Notes: generated by a model not told the origin, from the letters alone. A stretch of 64,000 nucleotides of DNA from Hypanus sabinus (GCF_030144855.1 NC_082712.1:34472001-34536000); one strand, 5' to 3'; shown: positions 5,201 to 28,867, counted from the first letter of the stretch. Made by a program: numbers and translations.

Positions 5201-7378
5201 TTCCTATAATTTGATGGCTTTGACAAAATGTTGGTTTTAATATCCCAGAAGATGGCCTCACACGATCAATATAGAACAAATTGAGCTTTTCCAACAGTGA
5301 ATGTCCTGTTGTAAGCATGTTGGTAGATCTACCAGTAATTGTGATTGTTAAACTGTATCTTGTGTATTCTTGTTTCCACATTTCCATGAATTCTGTATGG
5401 TTAAGAGCTGTGCAGTATGACATCTCCATGATCAACTTTCATGATTAACTAGTGGAACATTTCAAGTTGCATTACCTGATATTTAACCTCTTGATGTAGG
5501 TTAGTGCAGAACAACATGCTCTTGCCAAATACCTAATGGAACTGACAATAGGGGATTATGACATGGCACATTATCCTCCATCCCTGATTGCAGCAGCGGC
5601 CATCCACCTTGCTCAGAAACTCTTTAACTCTGGTGAATGGGTGAGTACCTTGAGTATTGACAATAATTCTGGTTTGAACCAATGCATGTTCAAAACATAG
5701 ACAATAGACAATAGGTGCAGAAGTAGACCATTCGGCCCCTTGAGTCTGCACTGCCATTCTGAGATCATGGCTGATCATTCACTATCAATACCCAGTCCCT
5801 GCCTTGTCCTAGTATCCCTTGATTCCCCTATCCATCAGATATCTATCTAGCTCCTTCTTGAAAGCATCCAGAGAATTGGCCTCCACCGTCTTCCGAGGCA
5901 GTGCATTCCACACCTCCACTTCTCTCTGGGAGAAGAAGCTCTTCCTCAACTCTGTTTTAAATAACTGACTTATTCTCAATCCATGCCCTCTGGTACTGGA
6001 CTCTCCCAACATCTGGAACATATTTCCTGCCTTAATCCTATCAAATCCTTTAATTATCTTAAACGTTTCAATCAGATCCCCTCTCAATCTCCTCAATTCC
6101 AGCGTGTACAAGCCCAATCTCTCCAATCTCTCGGCGTAAGACAGCCCTGCCATCCCAGGAATCAACCTAGTGAATCTATGCTGCACTTCCTCAATTGCCA
6201 GAATGTCCTTCCTTAAACCTGGAGACCAAAACTGTACACAATATTCCAGGTGTGGTCTCACCAGGGCCCTGTACAAATGCAAAAGGACATCCTTGCTCTT
6301 GTACTCAATTCCCCTTGTAACAAAGGCCAACATTCCATTTGCCCTCTTCACTGCCTGTTGCACTTGCTCATTCACCTTCATTGACTGGTGAACTAGGACT
6401 CCTAGGTCTCTTTGCATTCCTCCCTTACCTAACTCTACACTGTTCAGACAATACTCTGCCCTCTTGTTCCTGCTTCCAAAGTGGATAACTTCACATTTAT
6501 TCACATTGAATGACATCTGCCAAGTATCTGCCCACTCACCCAGCCTATCCAAGTCTCCCTGTATTCTCCTAACGTCCTCTTCGCATGTCACACTGCCACC
6601 CAGTTTAGTATCATCAGCAAACTTGCTGATATAGTTTTCAATGCCCTCATCTAAATCATTGACATAAATCGTAAAGAGCTGTGGTCCCAATACAGAGCCC
6701 TGTGGTACCCCACTAGTCACCTCCAGCCAGTCCGAGAAACACCCATTCACTGCTACCCTTTGCTAATCATTGTTGTTTTTAGACTCCCCTCTTGCAGTAT
6801 TACCTCTCGTATGAAGAAGAGGATTTGCTTCCAGTTATGCAACACATAGCAAAAAATGTTGTCCAAGTCAATAACGGTCTCACCAAGCATATGGTAAGTT
6901 TAAAACTTGAGCTAGCTTGGTAACAGTTGACATTTTTCAAAGTGGGTCTTTAGTTGAATTTGGCACATAACATCCTTGCCTGCAGTGGAGAAAAATGCCT
7001 TTAAGAATCCAGAAGAGCCTTCTGACTGAACTAAATGTTCAAACATTTTGCCAAATGTTCAGTCAATGTGCTGCACTGTTCAGTCTTGTCAAAAATCCAG
7101 TGTTTCAATTAACTGGATGCAGACATGCGGTAGTGCATAAACAAGAATGCAGAAATTTATTTAGTCTAAATAAATGCCTCAGACAATACAAATGTTTTCT
7201 AAGCTGCATTAACCATAATTTTAGCAAGCCAGACTTTTATAAATTGAAACTCTTTTCTTTCGTGCAGACTGTTAAGAACAAATATGCTAGAAAGAGTGAA
7301 CTAAGGATCAGCACCATCTTGCAACTGACATCAGTCCTGATTTTCAATTTGTCAAGATCACTAATCTCCAAACAATAA
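2280..7378 (+). CDS. ccnb1: G2/mitotic-specific cyclin-B1, 5'-partial (7 exons in window; D-box exons lie upstream)
   Basis: Exons 2280-2405 (least certain), 3139-3306, 4469-4627, 4955-5191, 5500-5640, 6783-6893, 7268-7378 (TAA); all AG/GT bounded, all phase 0. Translation has EELCDAFS (NES/CRS region), [29 protein letters not shown] (cyclin box), [35 protein letters not shown] and VKNKY. B1-type [10 protein letters not shown] and a downstream cenph support B1 over B2. Confidence 0.95.
5696..6764 (-). mobile_element. Young, 5'-truncated CR1 LINE (RT C-terminus plus 3' tail) in a ccnb1 intron
   Basis: Uninterrupted 313-aa ORF 5809-6750 ([36 protein letters not shown]). Microsatellite tail ATAGACAATAGACAATAG at ~5697-5714. 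Confidence 0.95.
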
Positions 7379-9899: not shown

Positions 9900-10620
9900 T
9901 GTTTTAAGCCTGTGCTAGGCAACTTCCAACTAAATCCCAACGCTACTTGGCAACCACATGAAACAAATGCCGAAATTTGAGCTTACCTTTGATAAATGTT
10001 GGAAATCCAGTTCACTTGATTGAAACGCTCCCTCGAATGGACTTCCAGACTTCTAGATTTAGGATTAAACACGGCAGAGGGCATGGTTTCGGGATAGATT
10101 CTGGACTTCACTAAATATCGACAGCAATCTGCAAGCGATGTCTCGACCGCTCGGCAATCGGAAGAAGAAAGTGACATTTGGGGAGCAACTAACTTACCGT
10201 GAGTTACCAAACACCGTCTGACGCTGGCGTGGATACAGGTGATGGGACTGTTTGGGTTTTCCAGTGCACTTTTCTTTTAACTCTAATAGCCCGCTTAATT
10301 TTCTTTATGGTCTGATGGCAATGACAAAGTTCGTACCACCCCTTGCAGTATTTGACAATCCTCATATCCGTCTCCAGGTCAGGCCACGGCAGAAAGCGCT
10401 CATCGCCATGGCAATGCGATCCGGTCCCACTTCGTTTTCCTTCTCAAAGAGCTAAAGTTATCTTCTCCCTTTTACCGGGCTTTGAAGGAGAAGGATGTCG
10501 TAACCACCGAGCAAGTGGGACAGATTGAGGTAAAGTTATATTGCATGTTATTTTGTCCCGTTGAACTTTGAGTCGCGAGCAGTTCTCGGGTCAATAGACA
10601 AGCAGACGCCGCTCTGCAGT
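9900..10620 (+). promoter_or_regulatory. CpG-enriched promoter/first-exon region of the CARD-coiled-coil gene with two RFX X-box-like sites
   Basis: Local rise in CpG density around exons 1-2. TGTGCTAGGCAAC 9911-9923 and GCTACTTGGCAAC 9942-9954 resemble RFX X-boxes (GTTGCCnnGYAAC). Confidence 0.55.
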
Positions 10621-13600
10621 TTTAACCTTAAAATTTCTTGTACAGGTGAACTTCCCCGTTGTTGACTGCAGAGAGTCCTAGCAAATATGAAAGTGTTACA
10701 ACGCACCCCCTTGTTTTACACCTGTTATTCTTTGTAACTTACTAATAACAAATTTTCCTACTTGCAAATCATTTTCATGACCTCTTTGCTTTGTTCCTCT
10801 CCCCCCCCCCCCCGGTATTTTGTGACAAGTGATCGTACAGTTTAAAAGATGCAGCTTGGAAGTACAGTACTGAGCTCGGTTATTTTTACAGCAACGATTA
10901 CCGGGGCGATAGCAAATTAAGAAGGGGTTGGATTCTGATGTGAGCTCTATCTCTGTAATAGCCCGCAATCATAAGTTATTCTGGGTCCATTGAAATAAGG
11001 AAACTCATCTTGACTGGCAGCTTTTCGGAATCTTCTGCAAATAAGATCCATCACCAATAATGTATAACCAGTTTATAAAATATTCGTCCGGTTCCTAATA
11101 GAACATCATGTAAAAAAATAATGAACTCTATTGTATTGGAAACAGAAAGTGCTGAAAGTAGACATAATTTGTAGCCAGTTCATGATTGAAACTTAACTGA
11201 ACAGATATGGCTCAGAGGTAATATCATTTTCTAACCCCTTCACATATGGTGGCAGGTCGATGACATATTTTGGGGAAAATATCAATGCTATTTGAGGTTG
11301 TAACCCTCACACTAGGTAAGTCCATGTATAAGATCTCAACCAATATCAGAAAGGAGAATTTTTTTTTTTACACAAATTCTCACACAAGGGACAGGCGTTA
11401 TCATTTTAGCAACCTTGGGTAAATGTCCAGTTGGAAACTGTGGACTGAATATTATGAAGATAGTTTGGGAATATATATGTTTCTCTAGAATGGCAACAAC
11501 TGGGCACAACAGTACAGGATTTTGTTTATTTTTGGGGGGATGTGGGCATCACTGGAATAACCAGCACTTACTGCCTTTGAGAAGGTGGTGCTGAGCTGCT
11601 GCCTTGAGTCACTACAGTCGTTCGGGTGAGGATGTTCCCGTAGTGCTGATAGACAGGAGTCCAAGATTCATACCCTATGATGACAAAGGGTCAATAACAT
11701 TTCAAAATTGGGGTGGTGTGAGGCGTGGAGGGGAGCCTGCAGGTAGTGCTGTTAACATCTGCCTGTCTCCCCCCTTGGTTGTCTTAATAGTAGAGGTCAT
11801 GCTACTGGGGGAGCACAACATGCTAGTGCCTCAGTTGTGGAAATGAACATCTAGATGGTGTACGGGGTGCCAATTGAGGAAGTTGCTCTGTCCTGGGTGG
11901 CATCAAGTGACCGGGATTTTGTTGGAGCCACAATTATCTGGCAAAGTGGAGAGTATGTAATCATTCTCATAATTGTGCCTTATAGAGTGTGAAAAGGCTT
12001 TGTGGTGTTAGGAGGTGAGTCACTCGCCTCAGGATACTCAGTCTCTGACCCACTCTTGTAGCTACTGTTGTAAGTGGCTGGTTTAGTTGAACTTCAGGAT
12101 CTGTTGCTGGGGCAATGGAAATGACACTGAATTGAAAGAGTATGGGTTTTGACTCTCTTTTTGGAGCTGATCATTGCTCAGCCCTACCTTAAAGTTCATT
12201 CAGTCCTGCTGCAGGCAGGGAGGCTTTGTTTACTGAGGGATTGGCAATGGAAATGAATGTGGTACAATCCTCAGGAATTGTCATACTTGTATGTCACACT
12301 ATAGACCTAGTAACGGAAGGAAGATAATTGATTAACCAGTTGAATATGCTTGAGTTTAGTTCCTCCACACCGTCTGCTATGGAAGGGCTACTACACAGGA
12401 CCGAAAGAAGCTGCAGAAGGTTGTAAATCTAGACAGCTTCATCTTGGGCACGAGCCTGCAAAGTACGCAGGACATCTTTAGGGAGCGGTGTGTCAGAAAG
12501 GCAGCGTCCATTATTAAGGTCCTCCAGCACCCAGGGCATGCCTTTTCTCACTGTCACCATCAGGTAGGAGATACAGAAGCCTGAAGGCACACACTCAGCA
12601 ATTCAGGAACAGCTTTTTCCCCTCTGCTATCTAGTTCCTAACTGGACATTGAAGCTTTGAACACTACCTCACTTTTTTAATATACAGTATTTCTGTTTTT
12701 GCACATTTAAAAAACCTATTCAATATATGTAATTGATTTAATTGTTTCTTTACTATGTTTTATAATTTTTTTTCTCTGCTAGATTACCTATTGCATTGAA
12801 CTGCTGCTGCTAAATTAACAAATTTCACATCACATGCTGGTGATAATAAACCTGATTCTGATTCTCTTGAATGGTTCTGGGACTGAGGTGGTTGATTTCC
12901 CAAAGCCACTTTCATTTGCGTGATATATGAATCTAACCGTTGCAACCTATTTTGTCCTGTAGCCCATTGGCTTCGGCATTAACAAGCTCCTTGATGCAAC
13001 ACTCAATCAGATGTTGCTTTGATTGTCCAGGGCAGTTACTCCTGTAGAATTTAGTTTGCGAGTTCATGTTGGAACCAATGCTCTGGAGAGAGATGAACCA
13101 GTGAAACACAACTTGGACAACAGTGATGGGGTTTTTCATGCTGTTTGATTCTAAAGATATATTTATACCCTAAAGCTTCACTTAATTGGGAATGAGATGC
13201 CAATTTTTCAGGTTTTCATAACTTTGGAGCTAATTTTGTTCCTCTGAGATCATTGATTTGCAATTATGAAGCAGCAAAATTCAAGTGATCAGGTGCAAGA
13301 AAAGACGGGACAGAAAGGGAGGGTAATGTAGCAGGATTCTCTTTTGAGTCAGTATGGGTGGAAGTCAGGAACAGGAAGGGAGCAGTTACTCCATTGGGAG
13401 TATTCTATAGGCCCCCTGGTAGCAGCAGAGATACTGAGGAGCAGATTGGGAGGCAGATTTTGGAAAGGTGCAAAAATAACAGGGTTGTTATCATGGGTGA
13501 TTTTAACTTCCCTAATGCTGATTGGCACTTGATTAGTTCCAATGGTTTAGATGGGGCAGAGTTTAAGTGTCCAAGATGGATTCCTGTCACAGTACATTGA

Positions 13601-16600
13601 CAGGCCGACTAAGGGGAATGCCAAACTAGATCTAATATTAGGTAACGAACTGGGTCAGGTCACAGATCTCTCAGTGGGTGAGCATCTGGGGGACAGTGAT
13701 CACCACTTCCTGGCCTTTAGCATTATCATGGAAAAGGATAGTCAGAGAGGACGGAAATTTTTAATTGGGGAAGGGCAAATTATGAGGCTATAAGGTTATA
13801 ACTTGTGGGTGTGAATTGGGATGATGTTTTTGCAGGGAAATGTACTATGGGCATGTGGTCGACGTTTAGGGATCCCTTGCAGGATATTAGGGATAAATTT
13901 GTTCCAGTGAGGAAGATAAAGAATGGTAGGGTGAAAGAACCATGGGTGACAAGTGAGGTGGAAAATCTAGTCAGGTGGAAGAAGGCAGCATACATGAGAT
14001 TTAGGAAGCAAGGATCAGATGGGTCTATTGAGGAATATAGGGTAGCAAGAAAGGAGCTTAAGAAGGGGCTGAGAAGAGCAAGAACAGGGCATGAGAAGGC
14101 CTTGGCGAGTAGGGTAAAGGAAAACCCCAAGGCATTCTTCTTTTATGTGAATAACAAAAGGATGACAGGAGTGAAGGTAGGACTGATTAGACATAAAGGT
14201 GTGACGATGTACCTGGAGGCTGTGGAAGTGAGTGAGGTCCTCAATGAATACACCTCTTTGGTATTCACCAATGAGAAGGAACTTGATGATGGTGAGGACA
14301 ATATGAGTGAGGTTGATGCTCTGGAGCATGTTGATATTAAGGGAGAGGAGGTGTTGGAGTTAAAATACATTAGGACGGATAAGTCCCTGGAGTCTGACGG
14401 AATATTCCCCAGACTGCTCCACAAGGCGAGGGAAGAGATTGCTGAGCCTCTGGCTAGGACAGTCATGTCCTCGTTGTCCACGGGAATGGTACCGGGATGT
14501 TGTCCCCTTGTTCAAAATGGATAGTAGGGATAGTTCGGGTAATTATAGACCAGTGAGCCTTTCGTCTGTGGTGGGAAAGCTGTTGGAAAAGATTCTTAGA
14601 GGTAGGATCTATGGGCATTTAGAGAATCATGGTCTGATCAGGAACAGTCAGCATGGCTTTGTGAAGGGCAGATTGTGTCTAACAAGCCTGAAAGAGTTCT
14701 TTGAGGAGGTCACCAGGCATATAGATGAGGGTAGTGCAGTGGATGTGATCTACATGGATTTTAGTAAGGCATTTGACAAGGTTCCACACAGCAGGCTTAT
14801 TCAGAAAGTCAGAAGGCATGGGATCCAGGGAGGTTTGGCCTGGTGGATTCAGAATTGACTTGCCTGCAGAAGGCAGAAGGTCATGGTGGAGGGAGTACAT
14901 TCAGACTGGAGGGTTGTGACTAGTGGTGTCCCACAAGGATCTGTTCTGGGACCTCTAATTTTTGTGATTTTTATTAATGACCTGGATGTGGGGGTAGAAG
15001 GGTGGGTTGGCAAGTTTGCAGACGACAAAGGTTGGTGGTGTTGTAGATAGTGTAGAGGTTTGTCGAAGGTTGCAGAGACACATTGATAGGATGCAGAAGT
15101 GGGCTGAGAAGTGGCAGATGGAGTTCAACCCGGTGAAGTGTGAGGTGGTACACTTTGGAAGGACAAACTCCAAGGCAGAGTACAAAGTAAATGGCAGGAT
15201 ACTTGGTAGTGTGGAGGAGCAGAGGGATCTGGGGGTACATGTCCACAGATCCCTGAAAGTTGCCTCACAGGTAGATAGGGTAGTTAAGAAAGCTTATGGG
15301 GTGTTAGCTTTCATAAGTCGAGGGATAGAGTTTAAGAGTTGCGAGGTAATGATGCAGCTCTATAAAACTCTAGTTAGGCCACACTTGGAGTACTGTGTCC
15401 AGTTCCAGTCGCCTTACTGTAGGAAGGATGTGGAACCATTGGAAAGGGTACAGAGGAGATTTACCAGGATGCTGCCTGGTTTAGCGAGTATGGATTATGA
15501 TCAGAGATTAAGGGAGCTAGGGCTTCTCTCTTTGGAGAGAAGGAGGATGAGAGGAGACATGATAGAGGTGTACAAGATATTAAGAGGAATAGACAGTGGA
15601 CAGCCAGCGCCTCTTCCCCAGGGCACCACTGCTCAGTACAAGAGGACATGGCTTTAAGGTAAGGGGAGGGAAGTTCAAGGGGGATATTAGAGGAAGGTTT
15701 TTCACTTAGTGGTTGGTGTGTGGAATGCACTGCCTGACTCAGTGGTAGAGGCAGATACACTAGTGAAGTTTAAGAGACTACTAGACAGGTATGTGGAGGA
15801 ATTTAAGGTGGGGGGTTATATGGGAGGCAGGGTTAGAGGGTCAGCACAACATTGTGGGCTGAAGGGCCTGTAATTGGCGATACTATTCTAAGTTCAAACA
15901 ACTGTGTCTTTCATTCTGTATTTCCTTACATCAGAAGTTATTGTGTAATGTACAACTGGAAATGTAATAAACATGGCTTTAAAGTAAAATTTAAGAAGTC
16001 AAATAAATTAAAACTGTTAATTGGTGCTCCGTGCAGTTAGAAAACTTGCCAGAACTGAAGGTGGCCAAACTACTTGAGATTGTTCAAAATGCTGATAGCC
16101 ACGTATTCAAGTCATTTTGCCGAGTTCTTGGTGAGATGGGATACTGGTACCTAGCGCAGAGTCTTCAAACTGCCTCTGAAGAGAAAAAATGGACATCTTC
16201 TACAGGTAAACAACAAGATGAAGTGAACTGGATTCTTCAAATTTTGGTGTGACTAAAATTCAAAAATAATTTGTCCTAATAATCTTTTTAAGTCTTATAA
16301 TTGTTTTCCTAAACAGAATATGCCTTGCATCAGTGAATTTTAATTTACAATTATTTTGGGTATGTTTTATTTTTATAAATCCTTTTTACTGTTTTTCAGG
16401 ATAAGATCAACAAACCATAAATACAACTTTAACTATAAAAATTCTTCTTTCTGTCCACTGCACCACTTAATCTGTGTTTGTTATTTTGGATAAGTTTTCA
16501 ATGCCAGTGGATAATTAAAATCAAGTTGGCAAGATTCAACACACCTACATAGTTGATGTTAAGGTTTTTTAAAAACTTAAAATCACACGGTCTTCATGTC

Positions 16601-19600
16601 TTTATAAATAAAATTCAAGGAGTTAGCCTACTTTTGAACAATATTAACCTAATTCCTTTCTTATCACATGTCTGTACTCTCAACATTTTTTGTTTCCATT
16701 TTGAATAGGAAGGTAATTGAAGTTTACAAACCATTAGCACCTCAACAATTGTTTCTGTAAATAAAAAAAAAAATTGGCAGACTTGCACAAAATGGCAGGC
16801 TTCCACTTGATTTAAGCAGCTCCTCTGCCTGCCTGAACTTCTCTCCTTGTTTTGCTCTAAGTTTTTTTTTAATTTGTAAGCTACATCACCTATCCAACAT
16901 TCTATCAATTTTCTTTTGTCCGTGTGGAATCAAGGTGCCTCCAAGTCAACACAGCTGACAGTGAGAGACTGGAACTTAGTGAAGCTCCATCATCCAATCC
17001 TTGAGCCAGGTAGGTTTAGAAATTTATATTGTTGGACTCAACAGTGAACCTTGAGACTGTAAGTTGCGTAGGAGTAGGATCTGCCTGAAAGTGAGGTTGG
17101 AACTGCTTTTCCTTAAGTGTTGGGTTGGGGTCATTGAGGCAAACCTGAGAAGTTAGTTCTGCCTGAGTGACAGCTGGCTGTATTAAGTCATAGGTAGTGT
17201 CCAATAGCCTCATCTTAGAATGGAGGAAGGTGCTACGTTTTAGGCCAAAAAGCTATTATGAAAATGCTCATGAAGAGGACATGGCATATAATCTTGAAAG
17301 GATACTGACTAGAATGTTAAACCTGATCTTTTCCACTTTATACCAGGAAAAAGTAAGTAATTTACAAACCTTGTATTAGAAGTAGAAATTATATTGGTCA
17401 ACAATGTAAATAGTAAGACTGCATCTGTAGTGGGTTAAACAATAGTCAGAAAAGTAAAAATTAATATACTTTTACATTTAATGTCTGATTTTTAAATAAG
17501 CTGATATGCAAAGACACCTGAAGTTATGAATGACCTGACTTACAGAAATACAAATTCTGCAAATTTTCCTAGATTTTTAAAGCATTTTTCAAGCTAGTAA
17601 TAATAATGATAAAATATTCCTCAATTCATTAATGACAGAATATATATTCCATTTGTTTAACTGTGAGTAGTATAGCAAGTGTAAATAATAACAATATGGG
17701 TTCCCATAGAAAACTAATCTTTCTAATTTACAGAAAAATGGCTTGAGGACAATTCTCATGAATGAAACCCATACATGATCTGGTGACTGTATTGGATTTG
17801 TGCCTACATTTCTAGATTTGAAATTTCTATTTAATAAAATTATAAGCTTCTGATGCTCCTTTTGTATGATCATTAACAAAAAATAAATATATATTGGAAG
17901 CGTATAATTTTATGAAAGTTTATACTATGATACAATTGGAGGCTGTTTAGCCCAAGCCCAATAAGGAAATGGCATCAATTTCACTCCTCCTCGTAATTCT
18001 TTGTAATCAATTCTTTGTCCCAACAATTCCACTCCTCCCCTCTTGGTTCTCCTGCTACCACCTGCATGAGGGATAATGTATAGAAGCTAGCTAACTTGCC
18101 ATTCTGCTTGTGGGATGTGGGAGGAGGGGAAATCCAGGGAGAATGCTGAGGGGGGGGGGGAAATGTTGACCGATAATTATTTTATTTACATTATTTCTCC
18201 ACAACTATTTGCACGCGAGTTTGCTAACTTTATATTAAATATTTAATTTTACCTTGTAGAACATATGTCTATATACGATAAGCAGCGCTTGAAAGAAAAC
18301 TTTCTGCTTTCCAAAGAAGCTAATAAAAATCTAAAGGAAGACAACCTGGAGTTGGGTCAAAAAGTGATACTTATGAGGGAAGAATATTTACAAAGGTAAA
18401 TCAGAAATATGTTATTTTCAAAATATTGAAGTACACAAGTAGTAGTGCTGATGATGGGGCAGTTAGTATACAAGAAATGTAGTGAGATTGTGAGGAAGAA
18501 CAGGCAGCTGATAGGGAATAATTGCAGTCAGTGGGATGAGTTGAAGTGTAACATGGCACAAACTCGGAGTGAGAATACAGGACTACAAGTGTTATATTTG
18601 AATGCACGCCATATACAGAATATGATTATCTTGAAGAGATTTGCAGGTATGACATTGTGCGCATCACTGAGACATGGCTAAAAAGATCATATTTGGGCAT
18701 TTAACATCCAAGGACACACTGTGGCTCTGTTGGTAAAGACAATGAAATCAAATCCTTAGAAAGAGGTGACATAGGATCAGAAGATTCTAACCTTGTGGGT
18801 AGAGTTAAGAAACTGCAAGGGCAAAACAACTCTGATGGGAATTGTATACAGAACCCCAAACAGTAGCCAGAATGTGGGATACAAATTTCAACATGAAATA
18901 GAAAAGGCATGTAATAAGGGCAATGTTATGACTGTCATGGGGGATTTCAATATGCATGTAGATTAGGAAAATTAGGTTGGTGCTGGATACCAAAAGAGGG
19001 AATTTATAGAATTCCTACAGGATTTTTTTTTTTTTTTTTGGAACAGCTTGTGTTTGAGCCCACTAGGGGAAAGGCCATTCAGGATTTTGTATTGTGTAAT
19101 GAACCAGATTTGGTTAGGGAGTTTAAGGTAAAGGGATCCTTAGGAGACATTGATAATAATATGATAGAATTCATCCTGCAGTTTGAGGGAGAGAAGGTAA
19201 AGTTAGATATATTAATATTACAGTGAAGTAAAGGACTTTAGAGGCATGAGAGAGGGTATAGCCAAAGTTGATTGGCAGGGATGATGGCAGAACAGTATTG
19301 GCTGGAGCTACTGGTGGTAATTTAGAAAGCTCAGATAGATACTATACGCCCCAAGGATGAAGTATTCTAAAGGGGTGATGAGGCAACTGTGGCTAACAAG
19401 GGAAGACAAAGACAACATAAAAGAAAGAGAGGGCATATAATAAAGCAAAAACTAGTGGGAAGTTAGAGGATTAGGAAGCTTTTAAAATCCAACAGAAAGC
19501 AAGTAAAAGACTATAAGGAGAGAAAAAGTAAAATATGAAGGTAAATGGCCAAAAATATTAAAGAGGATAACTAAAGTTTTTTTTAGATAGACCATAAGTA

Positions 19601-22600
19601 ACAGAAAGATGAATGGATATTAAACTACTGGAAAATCATACTGGAGTGATGGTAATGATGGACAAAGAAATGGCCGACTAACTTTGTCAGTCTTCACTGT
19701 GAAAGACACTAGCAGAACACCAGAAATTCTAGAGTGTCAGGAGGCAAAAGTGGGTGTATTTGCTATTACTAAGGAGAAGGTACTTGGGAAGCTGAAAGGT
19801 CTAAAGGTAGGTAAGCCACATGGACCAGATGGACTACACTCCAGATTTCTGAGATGGATAACTGAAGAGATTGTGGAGGCATTAGTAATGATCCTTCAAG
19901 AATCACTAGATTCTGATATGGTTCTGGAGGACTGGAAATTTGCAAAAGTCACTCCACTCTTTAAGAAGGGAGGGAGGTGGAAAAAAAAGGAAAACAATAG
20001 GCCAAGTTGGCCTGACCTCAGTGGTTGGGAAGATGTTGGAATCCATTATTAAGGATGAAGTTTCAGGATACTTGGAGGCACATGATAAAATGGGCCAAAT
20101 ATAGTATAGTTTCCTTAAAGGAAAATCTTGCCTGACAAATCTGTTGGAATTCTTTGAGGAAAAAAGAGGCAGGATAGACAAAGAAAAGTTGGTGGATATT
20201 TTTTACTTGGACTTTCAGAAGGCTTTTGACAAGATGCTGCACAGGAGACTGCTTAACAAGTTAAGAGCCTATGGTGGTACAGGAAAGATACTATCATGGA
20301 CAGAAGGTTGGCTGACTGGCAGGATACAAGGAGTCGGAACAAGGTGGGGGGCCTGTTCTGGTTGACTGCTGGTGACAGGTGGTATTCTGCGGGGGTCGGT
20401 ATTGGAACCACTTCATGTTATACTGTTTGTCAATGACTTGGATGATGGAATTGATGGCTTTGTGGCCATGTTTGCAGATGACACAAAGATGCATGGAGGG
20501 GCAGGTAGCTTTGAGGAAGCAGGGAGTCTACAGAAGGACTTGGACATATTTGGAGAATAGGCTAGGAAGTAGCAGATGGAACATAGTGTAGAAAGGTGTA
20601 TAGTCATGCACTTTGGTAGAAGGAATAAAGGTATAGAGTATTTTCTAAATGGGGAGAAAATTTAAAAAACAGATGCAAAGGAACGGGAGTCCTTTTGCAG
20701 GATTCTCTATAGGATAACTTGCTGGTTGAGTCAGTAGTGAGGAAGAAAATTGCAATGTTAGCATTCATTTCGAGAGGACTAGAATACAAGATAAGGATGT
20801 GATGCTGAGGTTTTATAATGCTTGGTCAGACTGCACTTGGAGTATTGTAAGCAGTTTTGGGCCACATACCTAAGAAAACATGTGTTGCCATTAGGTCCAG
20901 AGGAAAATGATTCTGAAAATGAAAGAGTTAAGACTGAGAAGTGCTTGATGACTCTGGGCCTGTACTCACTGGAATTTAGAAGAATGAGAGGGGTCCCATT
21001 GAAGCCTATTAAATATTGAAAGGCCTAGACAGTAGATGAGGAGAGCATGTTTCCTATAGTGGATGAGTATAGGACCAGAAGGCACAGTCTCAATAGAGGG
21101 CCATCCATTTTGAACAGAGATGAGAGGAATTTCTTTAGCCAGAGGCTGGTGAATCTGTGGAACTAAATGCTCCAGACAATTGTGGAGGCCAAGTCAATGA
21201 GTATATTTAAAGGAGAGGTTGAAAGGTTCTTGGCTAGTTGGGGAGTCAAAGGCAGGAGAATGGGGTTGAGAAGGGTAATAAATCACCCATGGTGGAATAG
21301 CAGAGCAGACCCAATGGGCAGAGTAGTCTAATTCTGCTGCTATATCTAATGGTCTAAGTTTAATGACATGAGCTAGAAGGTACAAGCAGATGGTCCCTCT
21401 CTCACCCACTCACCCACCAACCAGGTCAGGCAGCATCTATGGAAAAGAATAACGATTCAACACTTGAATGGATGCTACCTAACCTGCTCCAGTGTTTTGT
21501 TCCTCCAGATCTTCAGTATCTGCAGATTCTTTTATGTTTATGAAGCAGATGGAGTAAATGTGGGAAAATAAGGCAATTCAAAGTGATAATGGAAACAGAA
21601 GAAATATATAAAAGATAAAGCTAATAAAGAGCTGTGGTGGAGAGGATCTTGGCATGCTGGTCATGAAATGCAGGAAGTAAATATGTTGCTATCTCATGCA
21701 ACTAGGAAGGCAAATTGTATGTTAATCTTCATTGTAGGTAGAATAGGAACACTAATGTACAGTAATCTTGCTGAGATTGTACAGGCTCTCTAAGATCTCT
21801 TTGGAAGAAATGTATGTAATTTTTATCACTGCATTCAAAGAAAGATTTGCATGCTTTGAAAACAGTGCAGCTTAGGCTCGTCAGACCTAAGATGGAGCTA
21901 CCTAATGAAGAGAGATTCAAATTGACCCGCACTCACTGAAGTAAGTCATTGACATTGTGAATGGCAGACCACTCTGCAAACACTATTTTACTGACTCCTA
22001 TCTGTTTCTTGAGTCCTTATAAATGCACTCATGCTATACTGCATTTTTACACTCAATGTTATTCTTTCCAGTTTTCAACAATGGTGAGTTTGCATTGCAG
22101 TGCTAAATATCGCAGCAAATTGAAAATGGAAGACCACAATCCAGATATACAGTACTTCCCAGTTCTGGAGCAACATCAACAGAGATTTACAGACAATAGT
22201 AATAATTATAAGAGCAGAGAAATAGGTCATTTGGCCTAACATGGCCATGCCGCTGTTTTTGCCCACCTACACTAATATAATTTGCCTCTTTTAGGCAAAT
22301 CTATGTCCTACCTAGCTATTTTCCAATGAAAATGCTTAATAAACATAGATATTCTGTCTCATTCCACTGCCATATCCTCTGGCACTACTTTCAAGTTATT
22401 AACAACTTTCTGTGGGGGGAGAAAAAACTTGCCCCTCACATCTTTAAAATTCCTTCCTCATGTTAAGTCTATGCCACCTTTTTTTTATGGTCCCTATATA
22501 TATGCCTTGTAATTTTATATACTATCAGGTCATCCCCTGGCCTCCTTCACTGAAGGGAAAACAAACCCAGCCTATCTAAAATTCCCCATTACTGAGCCCC

Positions 22601-25600
22601 CCAGTTTCTGCTGACATTCTGGTGAACCTCTTCTGCACTCTGTCTAGTTTGTCACATCTTTTCTACAGTGCAGCAATCAGAACTGCATACAATACACCAA
22701 GTGCAGCCTAACCAGTGTTTTGCAGAAATGCAACATAGCTTCATAACTCTTGTATTCTTTGTCCTATCCTGTGAAGGCAGGCATGCCTTATGCCTTCATT
22801 GACCTCTCGACCAGTATTGCTGCTTTCAGGGAAACATGGACTTGGAGCTGCAGGCATCTCATCAACATTTCTTGGTTCACTACCATTTATTGTATGTGTC
22901 CCATCATAATATGATTTCTCAAAATGCATTACCTTATGCTTGTTAGGATTAAATTCCATCTGCCAATACTCTATAAACTTTTCATCAGATCTGTATGCTG
23001 CTACAGCCTTAAACTACCTTCCTCACTCTCCCGAACAACACTAATGTCAATTTAAAATTGTTCCCAATGAAGCCCAGGATGTCTTGCATCTATTTTATTT
23101 AACTAGGCAATGTGTCTATGACGAAAGGTTTGCCCAATAAATTATTCAAATTGGATTGCAATTCTACATATTTCAAATGTCCTGGTTAATTCGGTGGTTG
23201 CCTAACTGATCCAATACGTAGCCCAGGGAAAATTTGTGGCTCTGCTGACTATGCTGCAAAATTAAACCAATTCACACGTGGCTTATATCCCTCTCTGCCT
23301 GTCTCAATATCCCTTAGACATTGCTATCATATCTGCTTCCCTCAGTTCCCCTGGCAGTGCATTCTAGACACTAATCACCTGGTGGTTAAAAATAAATCTT
23401 GCTTTGCAAGTCTTTAAACATTTCCCCTTCTCACCTGACTGGAGTTCTGTGACCATTCAGCCCACTGCACTGCCATTCTATTATGGCTTATTTATTATCC
23501 CTCTCAATCCTATTCTCCTACCTTCTCTCCACAACCTTTGACACCCTTGCTAATCAAGAAACTACCAACTTTTGCCTTAAGGACTTGGCTGTCATAGCTG
23601 TCTGTACAGCAATGAATTCCACAGGTTCACTATGTTCTGGCTAAAGAAGCTCCTTCCTATCTCTGTGTTAAAGGGACATGTTGGTATTCTGTCCTCTCTA
23701 TGCAGGCCTTTCAATAAGAACTCCCTTATTCTTCTAAACTCCAGTGAATATAGGCTTAGAGCCATCAAACGATTCTCATACGATTGATGGTGGGACCTCT
23801 GCTTGTGATATATACTGTATCTGATTTGATTGAAAACATAGATCAGTGGGTTAGTAACTTTGAAACAAAGATTGCTGGAGTTGTAGCGTGTAATAGGCTG
23901 TCAAAGGGTACTGCAGAATATGGGCAGAAAAATGGCAGATGTAGTTTAATCTGAGCAAGTGTGAGGTGTTGCACTTTGGGAGGTGTATTTAATAGTAGTA
24001 CCCTTAGGAGCTTTGTACAGGAGGATCTTGGCATTCCAGTCCATAACTCGCTGAATGTGGCCATGTAAGTAGATGGGGTGGTAAACAAGACATATGACCT
24101 GCTTTCTTTGCCACTTTCATTGGTCAGAACTTTGAGTATGATTCAGGAATTCATATTGCAGCTATATAAAACTTTGGTCAGGCCCACTTGTAGTATTGTG
24201 TGCAATTCTGGTCACCCCATAAAGGAAGGATATTGGGGTTTTGGAAAAGTACCAAAAAAAAGGTTTATCAGGATGCTACCTAGATTAGAAAGTATGAGCT
24301 ACATGGACAGGTTGGACAAACTTTGGTTGTTTTCTCTGGAGTGTTGGTGACTGAAGGAGACCTTATAGAAATGTATAAAATTATGAGGGGCATAGATAGT
24401 TAAATCTGTTTCCCACAGCAAAAATGTAACAGAGGATATGTATTTAAGGTGAGAGGCTTAAAGGGGACGTGCGGGCAAGTTTATTACACAGAATAGTATG
24501 TGCCAGGAATGGGCTGCCAGGGATAGTGATGAAAGCAGGTATGATAGCAGAATTGAAGAAGCTTTTAGAAGCATGAATAGGCAGAAAATAGAGAGATTAG
24601 AATCCCATACATGGCAGAAGAGGCATTGTTTGGTGCAGACATTGTGTTGTACTATTCTATGTTCTATAATTCAAGTTCTCTAGTCTTGGCAACATCTTTG
24701 TGGATGATTTCTGCACATATCATATCATTCCTATATTGTAACCAAGACTGCATACAATTTTCGAGGTGCAGTCCCACAAGTCTTTTACAGCTGGAATATG
24801 ATCCCATTATAATGACATTGAATGTGAAGTTGTTGTTATGGCATCTCTCACCAGGTGTTCTGTCTCTCTCTTATACACTGACTCATCGTCACTGTATTCA
24901 ATACCTCATTCAATGGGGACATGTGCCATATGTCATCTTTTCCAACGTGTCTGTCTATGCCACCATTTTAAGGGAACTATGCACCTGTACTGCTAAATCA
25001 TTCTGTTGAACAACATTCTCAGGCTGTCATTCACTGTATATCCTGACATCATTTAACATCCCAAATCAAATCACTTCACACTTGCCTGAGTTAAACTCCA
25101 CCTGCCCCTCCTTTCCTACTTGATCTAAATCTTGTTGTAACCATAGACAATTTCCTTTCTGTCCACTATACCACCAATTTTGGATATCATCTACAAACTT
25201 ACTAATCAGGCCACCTACTCATCCAAATCATTAATGTGTAACAAATGACAGTGACCTAGCATGACAGTGAAGTACAACACTGGAAAATCAACCAATGGCT
25301 CTCCACCACCACCTTCTGACTCTTTCCACCAAGCCAATTCTGTATCCAGTTAGCTAGCTCACCCAGTGATCTCACCTTTTGGAACAGTCTACCATGTCTG
25401 TCCTTCTCAAAAGCCTTACTACATTCCGTATAGATATCTACCATCCTGCCTTAGTCAATCCTTAAGGTTACTGACCTCTTCAAAAAACAAATGAGAGAAT
25501 TTCCCACAAACAAAATCATGCTGTTTATTCCTAATCACCATGGTAGAGTAGTAGTTAGCACAACAGTTTACAATACTAGCAACCCAGCTTCAATTTCTGC

Positions 25601-26407
25601 CGCTGTCTACAAAGTTTTGTTCTACCCCTGACTGTGTGGGTTTCCTCCAGGTGCTCTAGGTTTTCTCCCACAGTCCAAAGACACTGGTTGGATATTAATT
25701 GGTTATAGTACATTATCCTGTGATCAGACTAGAGTTACATTGGGGGTTACTGGGTAGTGTGGCTTGAAGGGCCTATTCTGTGCTGTATTGCAATAAATAA
25801 TCACTCCTCCAAATGCTGTTTCTCAGAATCTCCTCCAGTGACATTGGGGTCAACTTTCCTCACACCATTGATTCTTGTGTTATCTGCTAAATTGCTAATC
25901 AGGCCACTTACTATCCAATTCCTTTTTGAAAGTCTTGTTTCTTCTATCATTAATCTAGGGACATGAAATGAACTCACAAATGAAGAAACTTTAAATTGGG
26001 AAGGAAGAATAATTAATAAAATTGATATTGGTCTAACATTTTTCCCCTTTAATTACTTTTCTCTTTCACAATTAGCATGTTTAATACTGCATTTATATAA
26101 TTAGGACAAGGGTTTTCTTGTGACTATATTTAACAGGTTGCAAGTACTTGAAGAAGAATTGGCTTCCGTGACTCATGAAAGAGATACAAGTGTGAAGGAA
26201 CGTAATATCACAATCCTGGAAATTAAAGAACTACAAAATCTCAACCATGAACTTCAGGAGCTAATAATAAAGCTTGAAAATTCTAAGATTAATGCTACAC
26301 ACAAGTATCCTAAATACAGTGTTGAGATGGTCCCTGTACCACCATTGACTGATGGGCAAATAAGTCTGCTGCTTACCTTCAATCAATATGGACAAATAAG
26401 TGATTAA
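10138..26407 (+). CDS. Uncharacterised RVxF-CARD-coiled-coil protein (262 aa; 287 aa with a probable extra exon)
   Basis: Exons 10138-10198, 10378-10529, 16037-16205, [16935-17009], 18260-18395, 26137-26407. All joins are GT-AG, phases match (1,0,1,[1],2) and there is no internal stop. Protein: [127 protein letters not shown]...[89 protein letters not shown]...GQISD*. AATAAA at 26505-26510. Confidence 0.85.
12361..12864 (+). mobile_element. Rex1/Babar- or L2-type LINE 3' end
   Basis: Near-identical in reverse to 46877-47400. RT C-terminal remnant ([21 protein letters not shown]), with tail AATAAACCTGATTCTGATTCT. Confidence 0.8.
13300..15897 (+). mobile_element. CR1 LINE, near-complete ORF2 with frameshifts, in intron 2 of the CARD gene
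   Basis: Consecutive ORFs 13358-13600 ([15 protein letters not shown]), 13805-14524, 14439-14858 ([37 protein letters not shown]) and 15007-15657 ([12 protein letters not shown]). Confidence 0.95.
18420..21355 (+). mobile_element. Degenerate CR1 LINE
   Basis: Fragments [36 protein letters not shown] and VRLHLEYC, separated by many stops. Confidence 0.9.
22200..25530. mobile_element. Cluster of old CR1 3' fragments in both orientations
   Basis: Remnants [13 protein letters not shown] (22741-22959, -), [10 protein letters not shown] (24078-24350, +) and SKAFEK..WIQNWL (25256-25444, -). Confidence 0.7.
25541..25800 (+). mobile_element. V-SINE (HE1-like) remnant
   Basis: tRNA-like head followed by a V-domain-like core TGTGTGGGTTTCCTCCAGGTGCTCTAGGTTTTCTCCCACAGTCCAAAGAC (~25634-25682). 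Confidence 0.7.
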
Positions 26408-28867
26408 TATAATGCAACTGCATTGAATACTTTACCATTGCACTGTTGCCTGTGACACTAAATGAAGTATCAGTCAGCATGTTTAGAAGGAAATCTAACT
26501 GAAGAATAAACTCCTGTGTAAATCCTTGGAATTAATAACTTTTTCATTCAAGCTGTGTGCTGTGGCCTGATTGTTTCACTAAGTGTTTGTACATCCAGAA
26601 TTCTCATACAACCAAGGAAGATTAGACTTATGAAAATAAGCTGATAGAGTAAATTTTATTATACAAATTAAGTCAGAAAAGACATTTTCAATTTACCAAC
26701 ATTGTTACATGAACAGTAAAGTTGTAGCAGCAACATCTTTAAAAATTTGGCACTTCATGTACAGCCATTGAGATTTTTTTGTCTCTATATTAACATTTTC
26801 AATTAGAACTGCAGTGTAAAATATAGTTCTTTAAAAGGAAATGGAAACGACATAGGTAATTTGTTTGAATTCATGTCACATACCAGTGACAATAAACCTG
26901 ATTCTGTAACTAGTGTGCAAATATGAATACTAGTCATGTTCTTTGAACATTGAACATACAACTGGCATTTTCACATTCTCCAAGACTGGGACTATATTGT
27001 GCATTGAATGGATGAATGTACTGTGTACTACAGTACATTAGGTTTGAGCACATTTGAGCAGACCCCCCCCCCCCGAAAAAAAATCATCATTAAATAGTCA
27101 AAATATGATTATAATAAAAACAGAAAATGCTGAAACTATCAGCATCTACTTCAAGGCTTTAAAAAAAAAATTCCAATTCTAATGAAAATTCAAATACATT
27201 ACATTTCAAGGGTAGTGTGTTTCATGACCTGAAATGTAATTTTTGCTGCCCACAAAAGACATGTTACTTGATGTACTGTATTTTCAGCCATTTTTTTGAA
27301 AACTATTTCAGCTTTCCAGCAACTGCAGCTTTTGGTTAACAATGACCATTGCTACCTCTATCTGGCTTTGAAAGTCATGAAGCTATTCTTGTCCCATTGT
27401 TTTCATTACCTTTTTAAATATGAAATTAAGTACTAGTTCAATTTATTTAACTTCCATAGATACTGGATTGTACAGGCATAATCAGTTTTTGTTTAACAAC
27501 TTTCAATTAATGTAAGTACAGGACATTTTAAAATTGTATTTGTCATCACTTGAGGTATATATTAATAACCTTGACCTGGCAGTATTTTTAGTTTATTACT
27601 AACAACCCTATCAACAGAACAAAAACAAGTGAAAATTTACTGTGGTATTTTCATTATAAAAAGCAACAACTTTCAATAGTGGGGATGCTGGAAATTAATG
27701 TTAACAATGAATAGGCCTTTCTCCCCACCCACCCAAGTTCTCAGGCATTTATTAACTCAACTTGTTTTGATCAAGAAGTATTCAACTGAATTAAGTCTTT
27801 CCTGCAATGGAACAACAGGTCAGAGAGGAAAAAGAAAATCACTGAATAGCAATTGAATTGATTTATAGATGGATTTGTTCACCCTCAAATCAAAGTAATA
27901 GGTTATTTGTAATGTCTTTTATACACAACTGTTTTTGTAACACACTTTGTTCAAACATCAGTTTTGAATTGTCATTTACTTAGCGTTGTTCACACCCTAC
28001 GTTAGAATAGCAATAACAAAATGAAAATGCTTAGCAGGTCAGGCAGCATGTGTGGGCAGAAACAGTTATTTCAGTGAAAAGTTGTCAATCTGAAACATTA
28101 ATTCCCTTTCAACAGGTGCTACCAGCTGTTCTTTTCCAGCATTTCATTTTTATCAAGGATTTCCTTTATCTGTAGTTTCTTTTATTTTCTTGATTCTATT
28201 AAAATCTACTAAGATGGTTGTAGTAATGGGTAGGTTTATGGACAGCAGAAGCAATAGCAGATATGGAACCAGAATGCCTCCCATTTCTCTGGCTCAACTT
28301 GGTGATTTGAGCAGAATACACATTTCTGAGCATGTGATCTGAAATCAAAAAGAGTAGTTCTGAATTTCTACTGTAGGAGCAACTCCAATTGCACAAATTT
28401 CAAGCCTTAAGTTCTAGTACATAAAGTAACAGCGATATTGTCATTATGTTTTGACATGGTGAATTCAAGGATGCACCATTTTACATAGCTCAAAGGCAGA
28501 TGGGGAGTTGAGGTATGGATCAGACACAACCCAGCTGAATGATCCATGCTATATCTATGCAAGGTGCAAGCCATGCTTACACCCACTTAACTATAAAATC
28601 ATGATAATTTACAAAAACAGTTTTTACATTTCAACAAATGCATTGACAAAATGCACCAAAACACTCGTCCTTGAGAAAGATCATCTCATATACAAATCAG
28701 TTATAGAGTAAATAGCATTATAAGGATGTTCTAAACTGACAGATTATCATCATTATTATAATAATATGTGAAATATAACTAGTAATTTAAATTATAAAAC
28801 TGACAATATTTACATATTCTTAAAAAGTAATCTGATATGGATGAAAATTAAAATGGTTACAGTCTGC

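What the first reader, a model, noticed from the sequence alone, without database searches (positions are those of the whole stretch)
10138..26407. Unusual architecture: RVxF motif + caspase-2-like CARD + coiled coil, no catalytic domain
Seen: a complete spliced ORF that the ORF track cannot show. Residues ~28-113 ([42 protein letters not shown]...[25 protein letters not shown]) match the CARD pattern. By eye they resemble the caspase-2 prodomain ([21 protein letters not shown]...AFDAFCEALRE) more than CARD9/10/11/14. About 90 aa of heptad-rich coiled coil follow. I do not recognise a named vertebrate protein with this layout. Inference: an oligomerising death-fold adaptor or decoy.
Basis: partly seen in the sequence, partly recalled or inferred. 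Interest (0 to 1): 0.85.

Follow-up and report, generated by a model that had tools for sequence, protein, structure and literature searches.

The report
Uncharacterised PP1-motif CARD coiled-coil gene
The window holds a real stingray gene, conserved in sharks, rays, basal bony fishes, coelacanth, lungfish and amphibians but not found in teleosts or amniotes, whose small non-enzymatic protein combines a phosphatase-1 docking motif, a caspase-2/Apaf-1-like CARD and a coiled coil, and which nobody appears to have studied.

Summary
With one 75-nt cassette exon it missed (16935-17009), they translate exactly to XP_059830005.1, "uncharacterized protein LOC132396481" of Hypanus sabinus (287 aa).

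- **CARD:** Pfam scores 27.6 bits, above its 23.9 cut-off. AlphaFold gives a six-helix CARD (residues 24-122), a disordered linker and one 94-residue helix with 3.5-residue hydrophobic periodicity.
- **Nearest CARDs:** Foldseek puts the domain nearest Apaf-1, caspase-2, caspase-9 and RAIDD, not CARD9/10/11/14.
- **Family:** about 45 protein clusters, all "uncharacterized", from cartilaginous fishes, bichirs, sturgeon, gar, bowfin, coelacanth, lungfish and amphibians. No teleost, amniote or jawless-fish hit appeared.
- **Gene position:** it lies just downstream of cyclin B in ray, sawfish, chimaera and frog, and just upstream of CENP-H in Xenopus.
- **Selection:** dN/dS is 0.28-0.41.
- **PP1 motif:** a stringent PP1-docking RVxF motif is kept in all 40 sequences that carry the canonical first exon.

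Best reading: an oligomeric, non-catalytic CARD adaptor that docks protein phosphatase 1 onto a CARD partner. PP1 binding and the partner are inferred, not shown. I found no paper on it.

The parts
10138..10198 (+). Coding exon 1: start codon and the basic, disordered N-terminus (20 codons plus 1 nt, phase 1)
   Evidence: ATG with G at -3 and donor ACC|gtgagt. Homologous first exons of 49-61 nt occur in Pristis, Callorhinchus and Xenopus.
10165..10179 (+). RVxF-type PP1-docking motif KKVTF (residues 10-14)
   Evidence: It fits the stringent pattern [HKR][ACHKMNQRSTV]V[CHKNQRST][FW]. All 40 family sequences with the canonical first exon have it. It lies in a stretch with pLDDT below 50.
10378..10529 (+). 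Coding exon 2: first half of the CARD (helices 1a, 1b, 2, 3). The CARD begins at about 10386.
   Evidence: Acceptor ctccag| and donor GAG|gtaaag. AlphaFold helices 24-71. The Pfam CARD match starts at residue 34.
16037..16205 (+). Coding exon 3: second half of the CARD (helices 4-6, ending at about 16189) and the start of the linker
   Evidence: The exon alone hits Pfam CARD at E 0.0023, profile positions 47-83 of 85. The Atlas top cluster is CARD, score 0.90. It found the orthologues.
16935..17009 (+).
   Evidence: Acceptor aatcaag| and donor CAG|gtaggt. It is needed for identity to XP_059830005.1. It is present in sharks and rays and skipped in annotated isoforms. No counterpart was found in intron 3 of Callorhinchus or Xenopus.
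18260..18395 (+). Coding exon 4 (exon 5 of the six-exon model): end of the linker and start of the long helix (from about 18274)
   Evidence: Acceptor ccttgtag| and donor AAG|gtaaat. This 136-nt exon is the same size in all five species.
26137..26407 (+). Last coding exon: rest of the coiled coil (to about 26296), conserved C-terminal tail and TAA stop
   Evidence: Acceptor tttaacag|. Helix to residue 251 with pLDDT above 90. Invariant L230, L233, N234, E236 and L244.
26505..26510 (+). AATAAA, the candidate polyadenylation signal
   Evidence: It is the first AATAAA after the stop codon. This is a position-based inference only.

Best explanation
This is the stingray copy (Hypanus sabinus LOC132396481) of an old, conserved and unstudied jawed-vertebrate gene.

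Its 250-290-aa protein has five parts:
- a disordered basic N-terminus carrying an invariant RVxF motif, [KR][KR]V[TS]F;
- a six-helix CARD of the Apaf-1/caspase-2/RAIDD type;
- a fast-evolving disordered linker, with a cassette exon in sharks and rays;
- a helix of about 90 residues with a heptad pattern;
- a short conserved tail.

It has no enzymatic domain.

Most likely mechanism:
1. The coiled coil makes the protein a dimer or higher oligomer.
2. The CARD binds another CARD protein or CARD assembly homotypically.
3. The RVxF motif docks the protein phosphatase 1 catalytic subunit.

The protein would then act as a PP1-targeting subunit for a death-fold signalling complex. The Thr/Ser inside the motif could switch docking off when phosphorylated.

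Shown here: the gene, its splicing, the CARD fold, the heptad helix, conservation of the motif, purifying selection, the taxonomic range and the synteny. Inferred: PP1 binding, oligomerisation, and the identity of the CARD partner.
For: Gene and model:
- The six-exon CDS equals XP_059830005.1.
- Exon sizes and phases are conserved in Pristis, Callorhinchus and both Xenopus laevis homeologs.

CARD:
- Pfam scores 27.6 bits, above the 23.9 cut-off. CARD is found in 10 of 12 orthologues, best E 5.3e-8.
- In the AlphaFold model, helices 24-122 have pLDDT 84-92 and helix 1 is broken, as in CARDs.
- Apaf-1 CARD gives TM 0.87 and rmsd 1.4 A. Caspase-2 tops AFDB Swiss-Prot.

Coiled coil:
- A single helix spans 158-251 with pLDDT above 90.
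- The family-averaged hydrophobicity has period 3.55; 31 of 5000 shuffles reach it.
- Conserved hydrophobic positions run at 7-residue steps from 188 to 244.

PP1 motif:
- The strict RVxF is present in 40 of 40 sequences with the canonical first exon, while its flanks vary.
- It lies in a low-confidence, presumably disordered segment.
- RVxF is the main PP1-docking motif, and phosphorylating its Thr/Ser weakens binding about 30-fold in RepoMan (PMC5005033).

Constraint:
- dN/dS is 0.28 (Hypanus/Pristis) and 0.41 (X. laevis L/S).
- By region it is about 0.25 for the CARD and 0.10-0.19 for the coiled coil; the linker is near neutral.
- Both X. laevis homeologs are retained.

Range and sharpness:
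- In the profile search, nothing falls between E 7e-44 and E 5.
Against: - No binding, expression or localisation data exist, and RNA-seq could not be consulted.
- The basic run before the motif (RKKK) could serve as a nuclear localisation signal instead of, or as well as, part of a PP1 dock.
- The Ki-67/RepoMan extension (KiR-SLiM) is absent, and no second PP1 motif was identified with confidence.
- My crude single-sequence heptad tests were not significant. The coiled coil rests on the family-level periodicity and on the AlphaFold helix.
- Some annotated isoforms in other species lack the first exon and so lack the motif.
- The CARD partner is unknown. CARD similarity ranking does not predict binding partners.
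Confidence: 0.5

Rival explanations
1. CARD decoy or inhibitor. The protein sequesters or caps a CARD partner (an initiator caspase or its platform), like the CARD-only proteins or ARC/NOL3, and the coiled coil only raises avidity. The N-terminal basic motif would be a nuclear localisation signal or irrelevant to PP1.
For: There is no catalytic or other effector domain. The CARD resembles those of caspase-2, caspase-9, Apaf-1 and RAIDD.
Against: The V, T/S and F of the motif are invariant across about 450 million years in an otherwise variable N-terminus. A plain basic NLS would not need them. The coiled coil is the most constrained part of the protein, dN/dS 0.10-0.19.
Confidence: 0.2
2. Fifth member of the CARD-CC family (CARD9-like). 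It would nucleate BCL10 filaments and signal to NF-kB through a paracaspase.
For: The overall order is CARD then coiled coil. Language-model features of the whole protein sit nearest CARD9 clusters, but only at score 0.85-0.86 with 144-147 shared features, which the tool calls a lead only. BCL10 is rank 5 in AFDB Swiss-Prot.
Against: - The CARD ranks CARD9 24th and CARMA1 49th in the PDB.
- No CARD9/10/11/14 entry is in the top 30 of Swiss-Prot models.
- The PDB profile search has no CARD-CC or BCL10 hit at E <= 1.
- A 35-60-residue disordered linker separates the CARD from the helix.
- The literature counts four jawed-vertebrate CARD-CC paralogues (PMC5978004).
Confidence: 0.1
3. Cell-cycle scaffold. 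The protein would be a mitotic PP1 regulator, by analogy with KNL1, RepoMan and Ki-67, with the CARD re-used for a non-death interaction. It would be co-regulated with its neighbours cyclin B and CENP-H.
For: The gene keeps its position between cyclin B and CENP-H. K-V-T-F fits the Aurora B type of site that switches RVxF docking off in mitosis (PMC5005033).
Against: Synteny is not co-regulation. I found no CHR/CCAAT-type pattern conserved within 600 nt upstream of the start codon in five loci, though the transcription start is unknown. This reading is a variant of the best explanation more than a true alternative.
Confidence: 0.12
4. It is not a functional gene: a chance ORF, a pseudogene or an annotation artefact.
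For: Nothing beyond the lack of any experimental record.
Against: Orthologues occur in about 40 species with the same exon structure. dN/dS is well below 1, the splice sites are intact and the frame is open.
Confidence: 0.02

Closest known systems
Caspase-2 prodomain, Apaf-1 CARD and RAIDD/CRADD CARD (apoptotic-initiator CARDs)
   Same: The same six-helix CARD fold with a broken helix 1. Apaf-1 CARD gives TM 0.87, rmsd 1.4 A and 22% identity. Four caspase-2 entries top AFDB Swiss-Prot at 20-23% identity. RAIDD is the best natural PDB sequence hit, E 4e-4.
   Different: There is no protease, NB-ARC or death domain. A coiled coil and an N-terminal RVxF motif are attached instead. Identity is only about 20%, so this is a separate family, not an orthologue.
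CARD9 and the CARD-CC family (CARD9/10/11/14)
   Same: The order CARD then coiled coil, in a non-catalytic adaptor. Whole-protein language-model features sit nearest CARD9 clusters.
   Different: It is much shorter (250-290 aa against 536 aa or more). A disordered linker lies between the CARD and the helix. The CARD is not of the CARD9/11 type. It has an RVxF motif and occupies a different locus. It is missing from teleosts and amniotes, which, from established knowledge, keep the four CARD-CC genes.
RVxF-type PP1 regulators with RV[ST]F (RepoMan, Ki-67, KNL1)
   Same: A basic run followed by V-T/S-F in a disordered region. The internal Thr/Ser is a possible phospho-switch (PMC5005033).
   Different: The KiR-SLiM extension FDxxLP(P/A)N(T/S)PL... 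is absent. The targeting domain here is a CARD. I found no paper that describes a PP1 regulator with a CARD: the one paper holding both 'RVxF' and 'caspase recruitment domain' is an unrelated review.
ARC/NOL3 and the CARD-only proteins (CARD16/17/18)
   Same: Small non-catalytic proteins built around one CARD.
   Different: Those lack a coiled coil and a PP1 motif. CARD16 is only rank 25. What I say about their architecture is from general knowledge, not tested here.

Membership tests
CARD domain (Pfam PF00619, death-fold superfamily) | Profile match above the curated gathering score | tested here: met
   The window's protein scores 27.6 bits against 23.9, E 3e-6, residues 34-115, profile 3-83 of 85. 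Ten of 12 orthologues match.
CARD domain (Pfam PF00619, death-fold superfamily) | Six-helix bundle with helix 1 broken into 1a and 1b | tested here: met
   AlphaFold helices are 24-37, 39-45, 50-58, 64-71, 76-88, 92-104 and 108-122, with pLDDT 84-92. TM is 0.82-0.87 to Apaf-1 CARD crystal structures.
CARD-CC family (CARD9/10/11/14) | CARD most similar to those of CARD9/10/11/14 | tested here: not met
   CARD9 is rank 24 (E 0.02) and CARMA1 rank 49 (E 0.1) in the PDB. None is in the top 30 of AFDB Swiss-Prot. There is no PDB profile hit at E <= 1. This is a similarity ranking, not a phylogeny.
CARD-CC family (CARD9/10/11/14) | Coiled coil following the CARD | tested here: inconclusive
   A heptad helix is present, but only after 35 disordered residues in the 287-aa form.
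CARD-CC family (CARD9/10/11/14) | Binds and nucleates BCL10 | not testable with these tools
   This needs a binding or filament-nucleation assay.
RVxF-type PP1-interacting proteins | Stringent motif [HKR][ACHKMNQRSTV]V[CHKNQRST][FW] in a disordered region, conserved in orthologues | tested here: met
   KKVTF lies at residues 10-14. The motif is present in 40 of 40 sequences with the canonical first exon. pLDDT is below 50 at residues 6-9 and 12-27.
RVxF-type PP1-interacting proteins | Physical binding to the PP1 catalytic subunit | not testable with these tools
   This needs a pull-down or ITC, with an RVxF mutant as control.
Ki-67/RepoMan PP1-binding module | KiR-SLiM FDxxLP(P/A)N(T/S)PL(R/K)(R/K)Gx(T/S)P after the RVxF | tested here: not met
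   The residues after KKVTF (GEQLTYRQATAES...) show no such pattern.
Caspases (caspase-2) | Peptidase C14 catalytic domain after the CARD | tested here: not met
   The only Pfam match above its curated cut-off is CARD. The protein ends at residue 287, and the orthologues are 221-300 aa.

The most novel reading that the evidence does not exclude
The family is the missing targeting subunit that brings PP1 to caspase-2 or its RAIDD/PIDD platform through a CARD-CARD contact. It would set the phosphorylation state, and so the activation threshold, of caspase-2 in anamniote oocytes, eggs and dividing cells.

PP1 is reported to dephosphorylate caspase-2 at the Cdk1-cyclin B1 site, S308 in Xenopus, and to control its metabolic phospho-site (review PMC7290664). 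I know of no targeting subunit for this. Xenopus has the gene, so the idea is directly testable in egg extract.
Probability: 0.12. Interest if true: 0.85.

Novelty: new variant of a known kind. Interest (0 to 1): 0.62.

Why it matters
CARD adaptors and PP1 regulatory subunits are both heavily studied. Even so, this conserved family, which appears to join the two, carries only automatic "uncharacterized" labels and I found no paper on it.

- It was probably overlooked because it was not found in the proteomes of mammals, birds, reptiles or teleosts. Of the main laboratory vertebrates, mouse, chick and zebrafish therefore lack it; Xenopus has it.
- If it does dock PP1 onto a CARD complex, it would be the first death-fold-targeted PP1 holoenzyme that I know of.
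- It would also give a concrete candidate for the PP1 control of caspase-2 seen in Xenopus egg extracts.
- Its apparent loss on the teleost and amniote stems is an evolutionary question in its own right.
- For annotation, the family deserves a name and a model.

Tried and rejected
- **Exon-by-exon searches.** Exon 2 alone has no Pfam or PDB hit. Exon 3 alone is below the Pfam cut-off.
- **Spurious repeat hits.** Phmmer of exon 3 against the PDB and the 1.84-billion-protein library returns alphaRep/HEAT-type repeat proteins. These are sums of many weak repeats and I rejected them as spurious.
- **Is the gene longer?** I first suspected the ORF was the 5' part of a longer CARD-CC or DLG5-like gene running downstream. 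I rejected this: orthologues are all 221-300 aa, and the next gene is on the minus strand.
- **CENP-H.** Because the gene follows cyclin B, I considered that it might be CENP-H. I rejected this: in Xenopus, CENP-H is the next gene downstream.
- **Heptad tests.** Single-sequence heptad register tests were not significant. They were replaced by the family-averaged periodicity test.
- **Promoter scan.** I scanned 600 nt upstream of the start codon in five loci for CHR, CCAAT, E2F, GC and TATA motifs. Nothing was conserved.
- **CENP-H in the window.** Translated Xenopus CENP-H-region segments gave no hit in the window at E <= 1e-4, and Pfam found nothing on the candidate exons. Whether CENP-H starts in the window is open.
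- **Cassette exon outside sharks and rays.** I looked in intron 3 of Callorhinchus and Xenopus and found none.
- **Literature.** Twelve LOC gene symbols and one locus tag returned no paper. 'RVxF' plus 'caspase recruitment domain' returned one unrelated review.
- **Earlier notes of this scan.** A word search for CARD returned nothing.
- **Not done.** I did not build a CARD phylogeny against named reference CARDs, because no tool returned those sequences and I did not type them from memory.
Full report
**1. The observation**

The window is vertebrate DNA of about 40% G+C with LINE-type reverse-transcriptase fragments in its introns.

- 10138-10198 (ATG, then ...[13 protein letters not shown]);
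- 10378-10529;
- 16037-16205;
- 18260-18395;
- 26137-26407, ending in TAA.

An AATAAA follows the stop about 100 nt downstream. Joined, the exons give an open 262-aa frame.

A phmmer search of the 56-aa exon-3 peptide against 1.84 billion representative proteins returned a set of 221-300-aa proteins. In these the match lies at about residues 70-125. One relative, P0061, is XP_059830005.1, 'uncharacterized protein LOC132396481 [Hypanus sabinus]', 287 aa.

P0061 contains 25 extra residues. The six-exon CDS from the window translates to P0061 without a single difference. Skipped forms are annotated in Pristis (262 against 287 aa) and Stegostoma (259 against 289 aa).

**2. The gene is real and constrained**

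I rebuilt the CDS in Pristis, Callorhinchus and both Xenopus laevis homeologs from their genomic loci.
- Exon sizes are 61/152/169/75/136/268 nt in the two batoids, 52/161/166/136/256 in the chimaera, and 49/146/169/136/250 (or 244) in the frog.
- The intron positions are therefore the same.

Nei-Gojobori dN/dS:

| Comparison | dN/dS |
|---|---|
| Hypanus against Pristis | 0.28 |
| The two X. laevis homeologs | 0.41 |

By region, the value is about 0.25 for the CARD and 0.10-0.19 for the long helix. The linker is close to neutral.

**3. Anatomy**

*CARD.*
- Exon 3 alone hits Pfam CARD below the cut-off (18.4 bits).
- The whole protein passes it (27.6 against 23.9 bits, E 3e-6, residues 34-115).
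- Ten of 12 orthologues match, best E 5.3e-8.

*AlphaFold2 model, built on a 31-sequence family alignment.*
- Residues 24-122 form seven helical segments, with helix 1 broken as in CARDs, at pLDDT 84-92.
- Residues 123-157 are disordered.
- Residues 158-251 form one continuous helix, mostly at pLDDT above 90.
- The C-terminal hairpin has low confidence.

*Long helix.*
- The family-averaged hydrophobicity has its strongest period at 3.55 residues; 31 of 5000 column shuffles reach the power at 3.5. The CARD peaks at 3.8.
- Conserved hydrophobic positions run in steps of seven from 188 to 244, with L230, L233, L237, L240 and L244 spaced 3-4-3-4.
- Only 36% of the helix is charged, which argues against a single-alpha-helix domain.
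- I therefore accept the coiled coil. My cruder single-sequence tests were not significant.

**4. The RVxF motif**

The stringent PP1-docking pattern [HKR][ACHKMNQRSTV]V[CHKNQRST][FW] occurs once in the protein, at residues 10-14.
- It occurs at the same place in all 40 family sequences that have the canonical first exon, as KKVTF, RKVTF, KRVTF, KKVSF or KRVSF.
- The 11 sequences without it are N-terminally truncated or alternative-first-exon models.
- The residues around it vary, apart from a frequent acidic residue two positions after the Phe and a hydrophobic pair at +5/+6.
- It lies in a low-confidence segment of the model.
- The Ki-67/RepoMan extension (KiR-SLiM) defined in PMC5005033 is not present. 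So the similarity to those proteins, noted in a separate first-stage entry, stops at the RVxF level.
- The same paper shows that a phosphomimetic at the Thr of RVTF lowers PP1 affinity about 30-fold. K-V-T-F has the basic residue at -2 and the hydrophobic residue at +1 of an Aurora-B-type site. That last point is my inference.

**5. Which CARD**

| Search | Result |
|---|---|
| Foldseek, PDB | Apaf-1 CARD first (E 1e-4, TM by target 0.87, rmsd 1.4 A, 22% identity), then caspase-9, CARD8, RAIDD and NOD1; CARD9 rank 24 (E 0.02); CARMA1 rank 49 (E 0.1) |
| Foldseek, AFDB Swiss-Prot | Top four are caspase-2 of rat, mouse, human and chicken (E 7e-6 to 3e-5, 20-23% identity), then BCL10, caspase-9, CED-3, caspase-1, Apaf-1 and CRADD; no CARD9/10/11/14 in the top 30 |
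| Family profile, PDB sequences | RAIDD E 4e-4, Apaf-1 about 0.14, no CARD-CC protein or BCL10 at E <= 1 |
| AFDB fold clusters | Only the family's own members align over the full length |

NCBI's pipeline named a Bufo fragment of this family 'caspase-2-like'.

The one pointer the other way is whole-protein language-model similarity to CARD9 clusters. The score is 0.85-0.86, below the tool's own reliability line. It most simply reflects the shared order of CARD then coiled coil.

The family is not an orthologue of a known CARD-CC member. The CARD-CC literature counts four jawed-vertebrate paralogues (PMC5978004).

**6. Range and position**

Two profile searches of the 5.8-billion-protein collection found 38 and 39 clusters (about 45 distinct). 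Every one is labelled 'uncharacterized' or 'hypothetical', apart from automatic 'CARD domain-containing' labels, one 'unnamed protein product' and one 'caspase-2-like'.

Taxa represented:
- sharks, rays, skates, a sawfish and Callorhinchus;
- Polypterus and Erpetoichthys, Acipenser, Lepisosteus and Amia;
- Latimeria and Protopterus;
- many frogs, including both Xenopus species, plus Pleurodeles and a caecilian.

In the second search nothing lies between E 7e-44 and E 5. The exhaustive phmmer search also found no teleost, amniote or jawless-vertebrate protein.

The simplest reading is an origin at or before the jawed-vertebrate ancestor and separate losses on the teleost and amniote stems. This rests on annotated proteomes, not on genome searches.

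Gene order:
- The gene lies directly downstream of a cyclin B gene on the same strand in Hypanus (cyclin exons at 3103-7378), Pristis, Callorhinchus and Xenopus.
- In Xenopus, CENP-H follows 5 kb downstream.
- In the cartilaginous fishes a minus-strand multi-pass membrane gene lies next.
- From memory, human CCNB1 and CENPH are direct neighbours on 5q13. If so, the gene was lost from that interval. I could not check this here.

**7. How it most likely works**

The constrained parts are a docking motif for PP1, a homotypic interaction domain and an oligomerising helix. The linker between them drifts freely. That is the layout of a targeting subunit.
1. The coiled coil sets the valency.
2. The CARD chooses the partner.
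3. The RVxF motif brings the phosphatase.

I put about 0.65 on PP1 binding as such and about 0.5 on the whole model.

The partner is open. By resemblance, the candidates are the caspase-2/RAIDD, caspase-9/Apaf-1 and BCL10 systems. PP1 is reported to dephosphorylate caspase-2 at the Cdk1-cyclin B1 site (S340 in human, S308 in Xenopus) and to take part in its metabolic control in Xenopus (review PMC7290664). That makes caspase-2 the most interesting candidate, at about 0.12.

The rivals are:
- a plain decoy;
- a fifth CARD-CC protein that nucleates BCL10;
- a mitotic scaffold;
- a non-gene, which the data exclude.

**8. Novelty and verdict**

- The parts are all known kinds. I found their combination nowhere else.
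- Searches of 8.4 million papers with twelve LOC gene symbols and one locus tag, and with 'RVxF' plus 'caspase recruitment domain', found nothing relevant.
- The proteins exist in databases as automatic predictions, so the sequence itself is not new. The recognition of a conserved PP1-motif/CARD/coiled-coil family, its restricted range and its fixed position next to cyclin B appear to be new.
- I rate it a new variant of a known kind, with interest 0.62.
- Earlier notes of this scan on the same window only repeat the RVxF observation and describe neighbouring genes.

Noticed in passing
window 3103-7378 (+): Most of a cyclin B gene, B1-like by my reading. Cyclin-box exons lie at 4412-4714 and 4955-5206 (Pfam Cyclin_N, E 1e-15 and 3e-23), with further exons at about 5500-5697, 6783-6920 and 7260-7378. 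It ends about 2.8 kb before the CARD gene's start codon. The same neighbour is found in Pristis, Callorhinchus and Xenopus.
   Followed up: partly
window 16935-17009 (+): A 75-nt cassette exon encoding a conserved ...DWN.VKL...EP peptide in the disordered linker. It is present in sharks and rays and skipped in some annotated isoforms. No counterpart was found in intron 3 of Callorhinchus or Xenopus. Its function is unknown; it may be a short linear motif.
   Followed up: partly
window 28871-48786 (-): A multi-pass membrane gene lying tail to tail with the CARD gene. Its exons lie at about 48568-48786, 41124-41255, 39396-39593, 36753-36908, 32605-32748 and 28871-29116. Orthologues are annotated in Pristis (381 aa) and Callorhinchus (388 aa). 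No Pfam family was found, only a weak TMEM107-like hit on one exon. It is not seen between the CARD gene and CENP-H in Xenopus. Another first-stage entry covers it.
   Followed up: partly
window 5809-6750 (-), 13344-15873 (+), 18793-21331 (+), 40051-41000 (-), 52094-52384 (+): LINE-type reverse-transcriptase ORF fragments (FADDT-type motifs). They account for most long ORFs in the region.
   Followed up: no
window 16037-16204 (+), the peptide [28 protein letters not shown]: The second half of the CARD gives misleadingly strong matches to HEAT/alphaRep-type repeat proteins, because many weak repeat matches add up (E 3e-4 in the PDB, E 1.7e-19 in the large library). This is a trap for automatic annotation.
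   Followed up: yes
window 63731-64000 (+): An open frame at the window's end reads like a coiled-coil exon and could belong to CENP-H, which follows this gene in Xenopus. Neither Pfam nor a tblastn with Xenopus CENP-H-region segments confirmed it.
   Followed up: partly
window 10020-10060 (+) and L005 9870-9910: About 100 nt upstream of the start codon, a stretch (...ccagttcacttgattgaaacg...) is nearly identical in Hypanus and Pristis. It may be a promoter or 5'UTR element. It was not analysed further.
   Followed up: no
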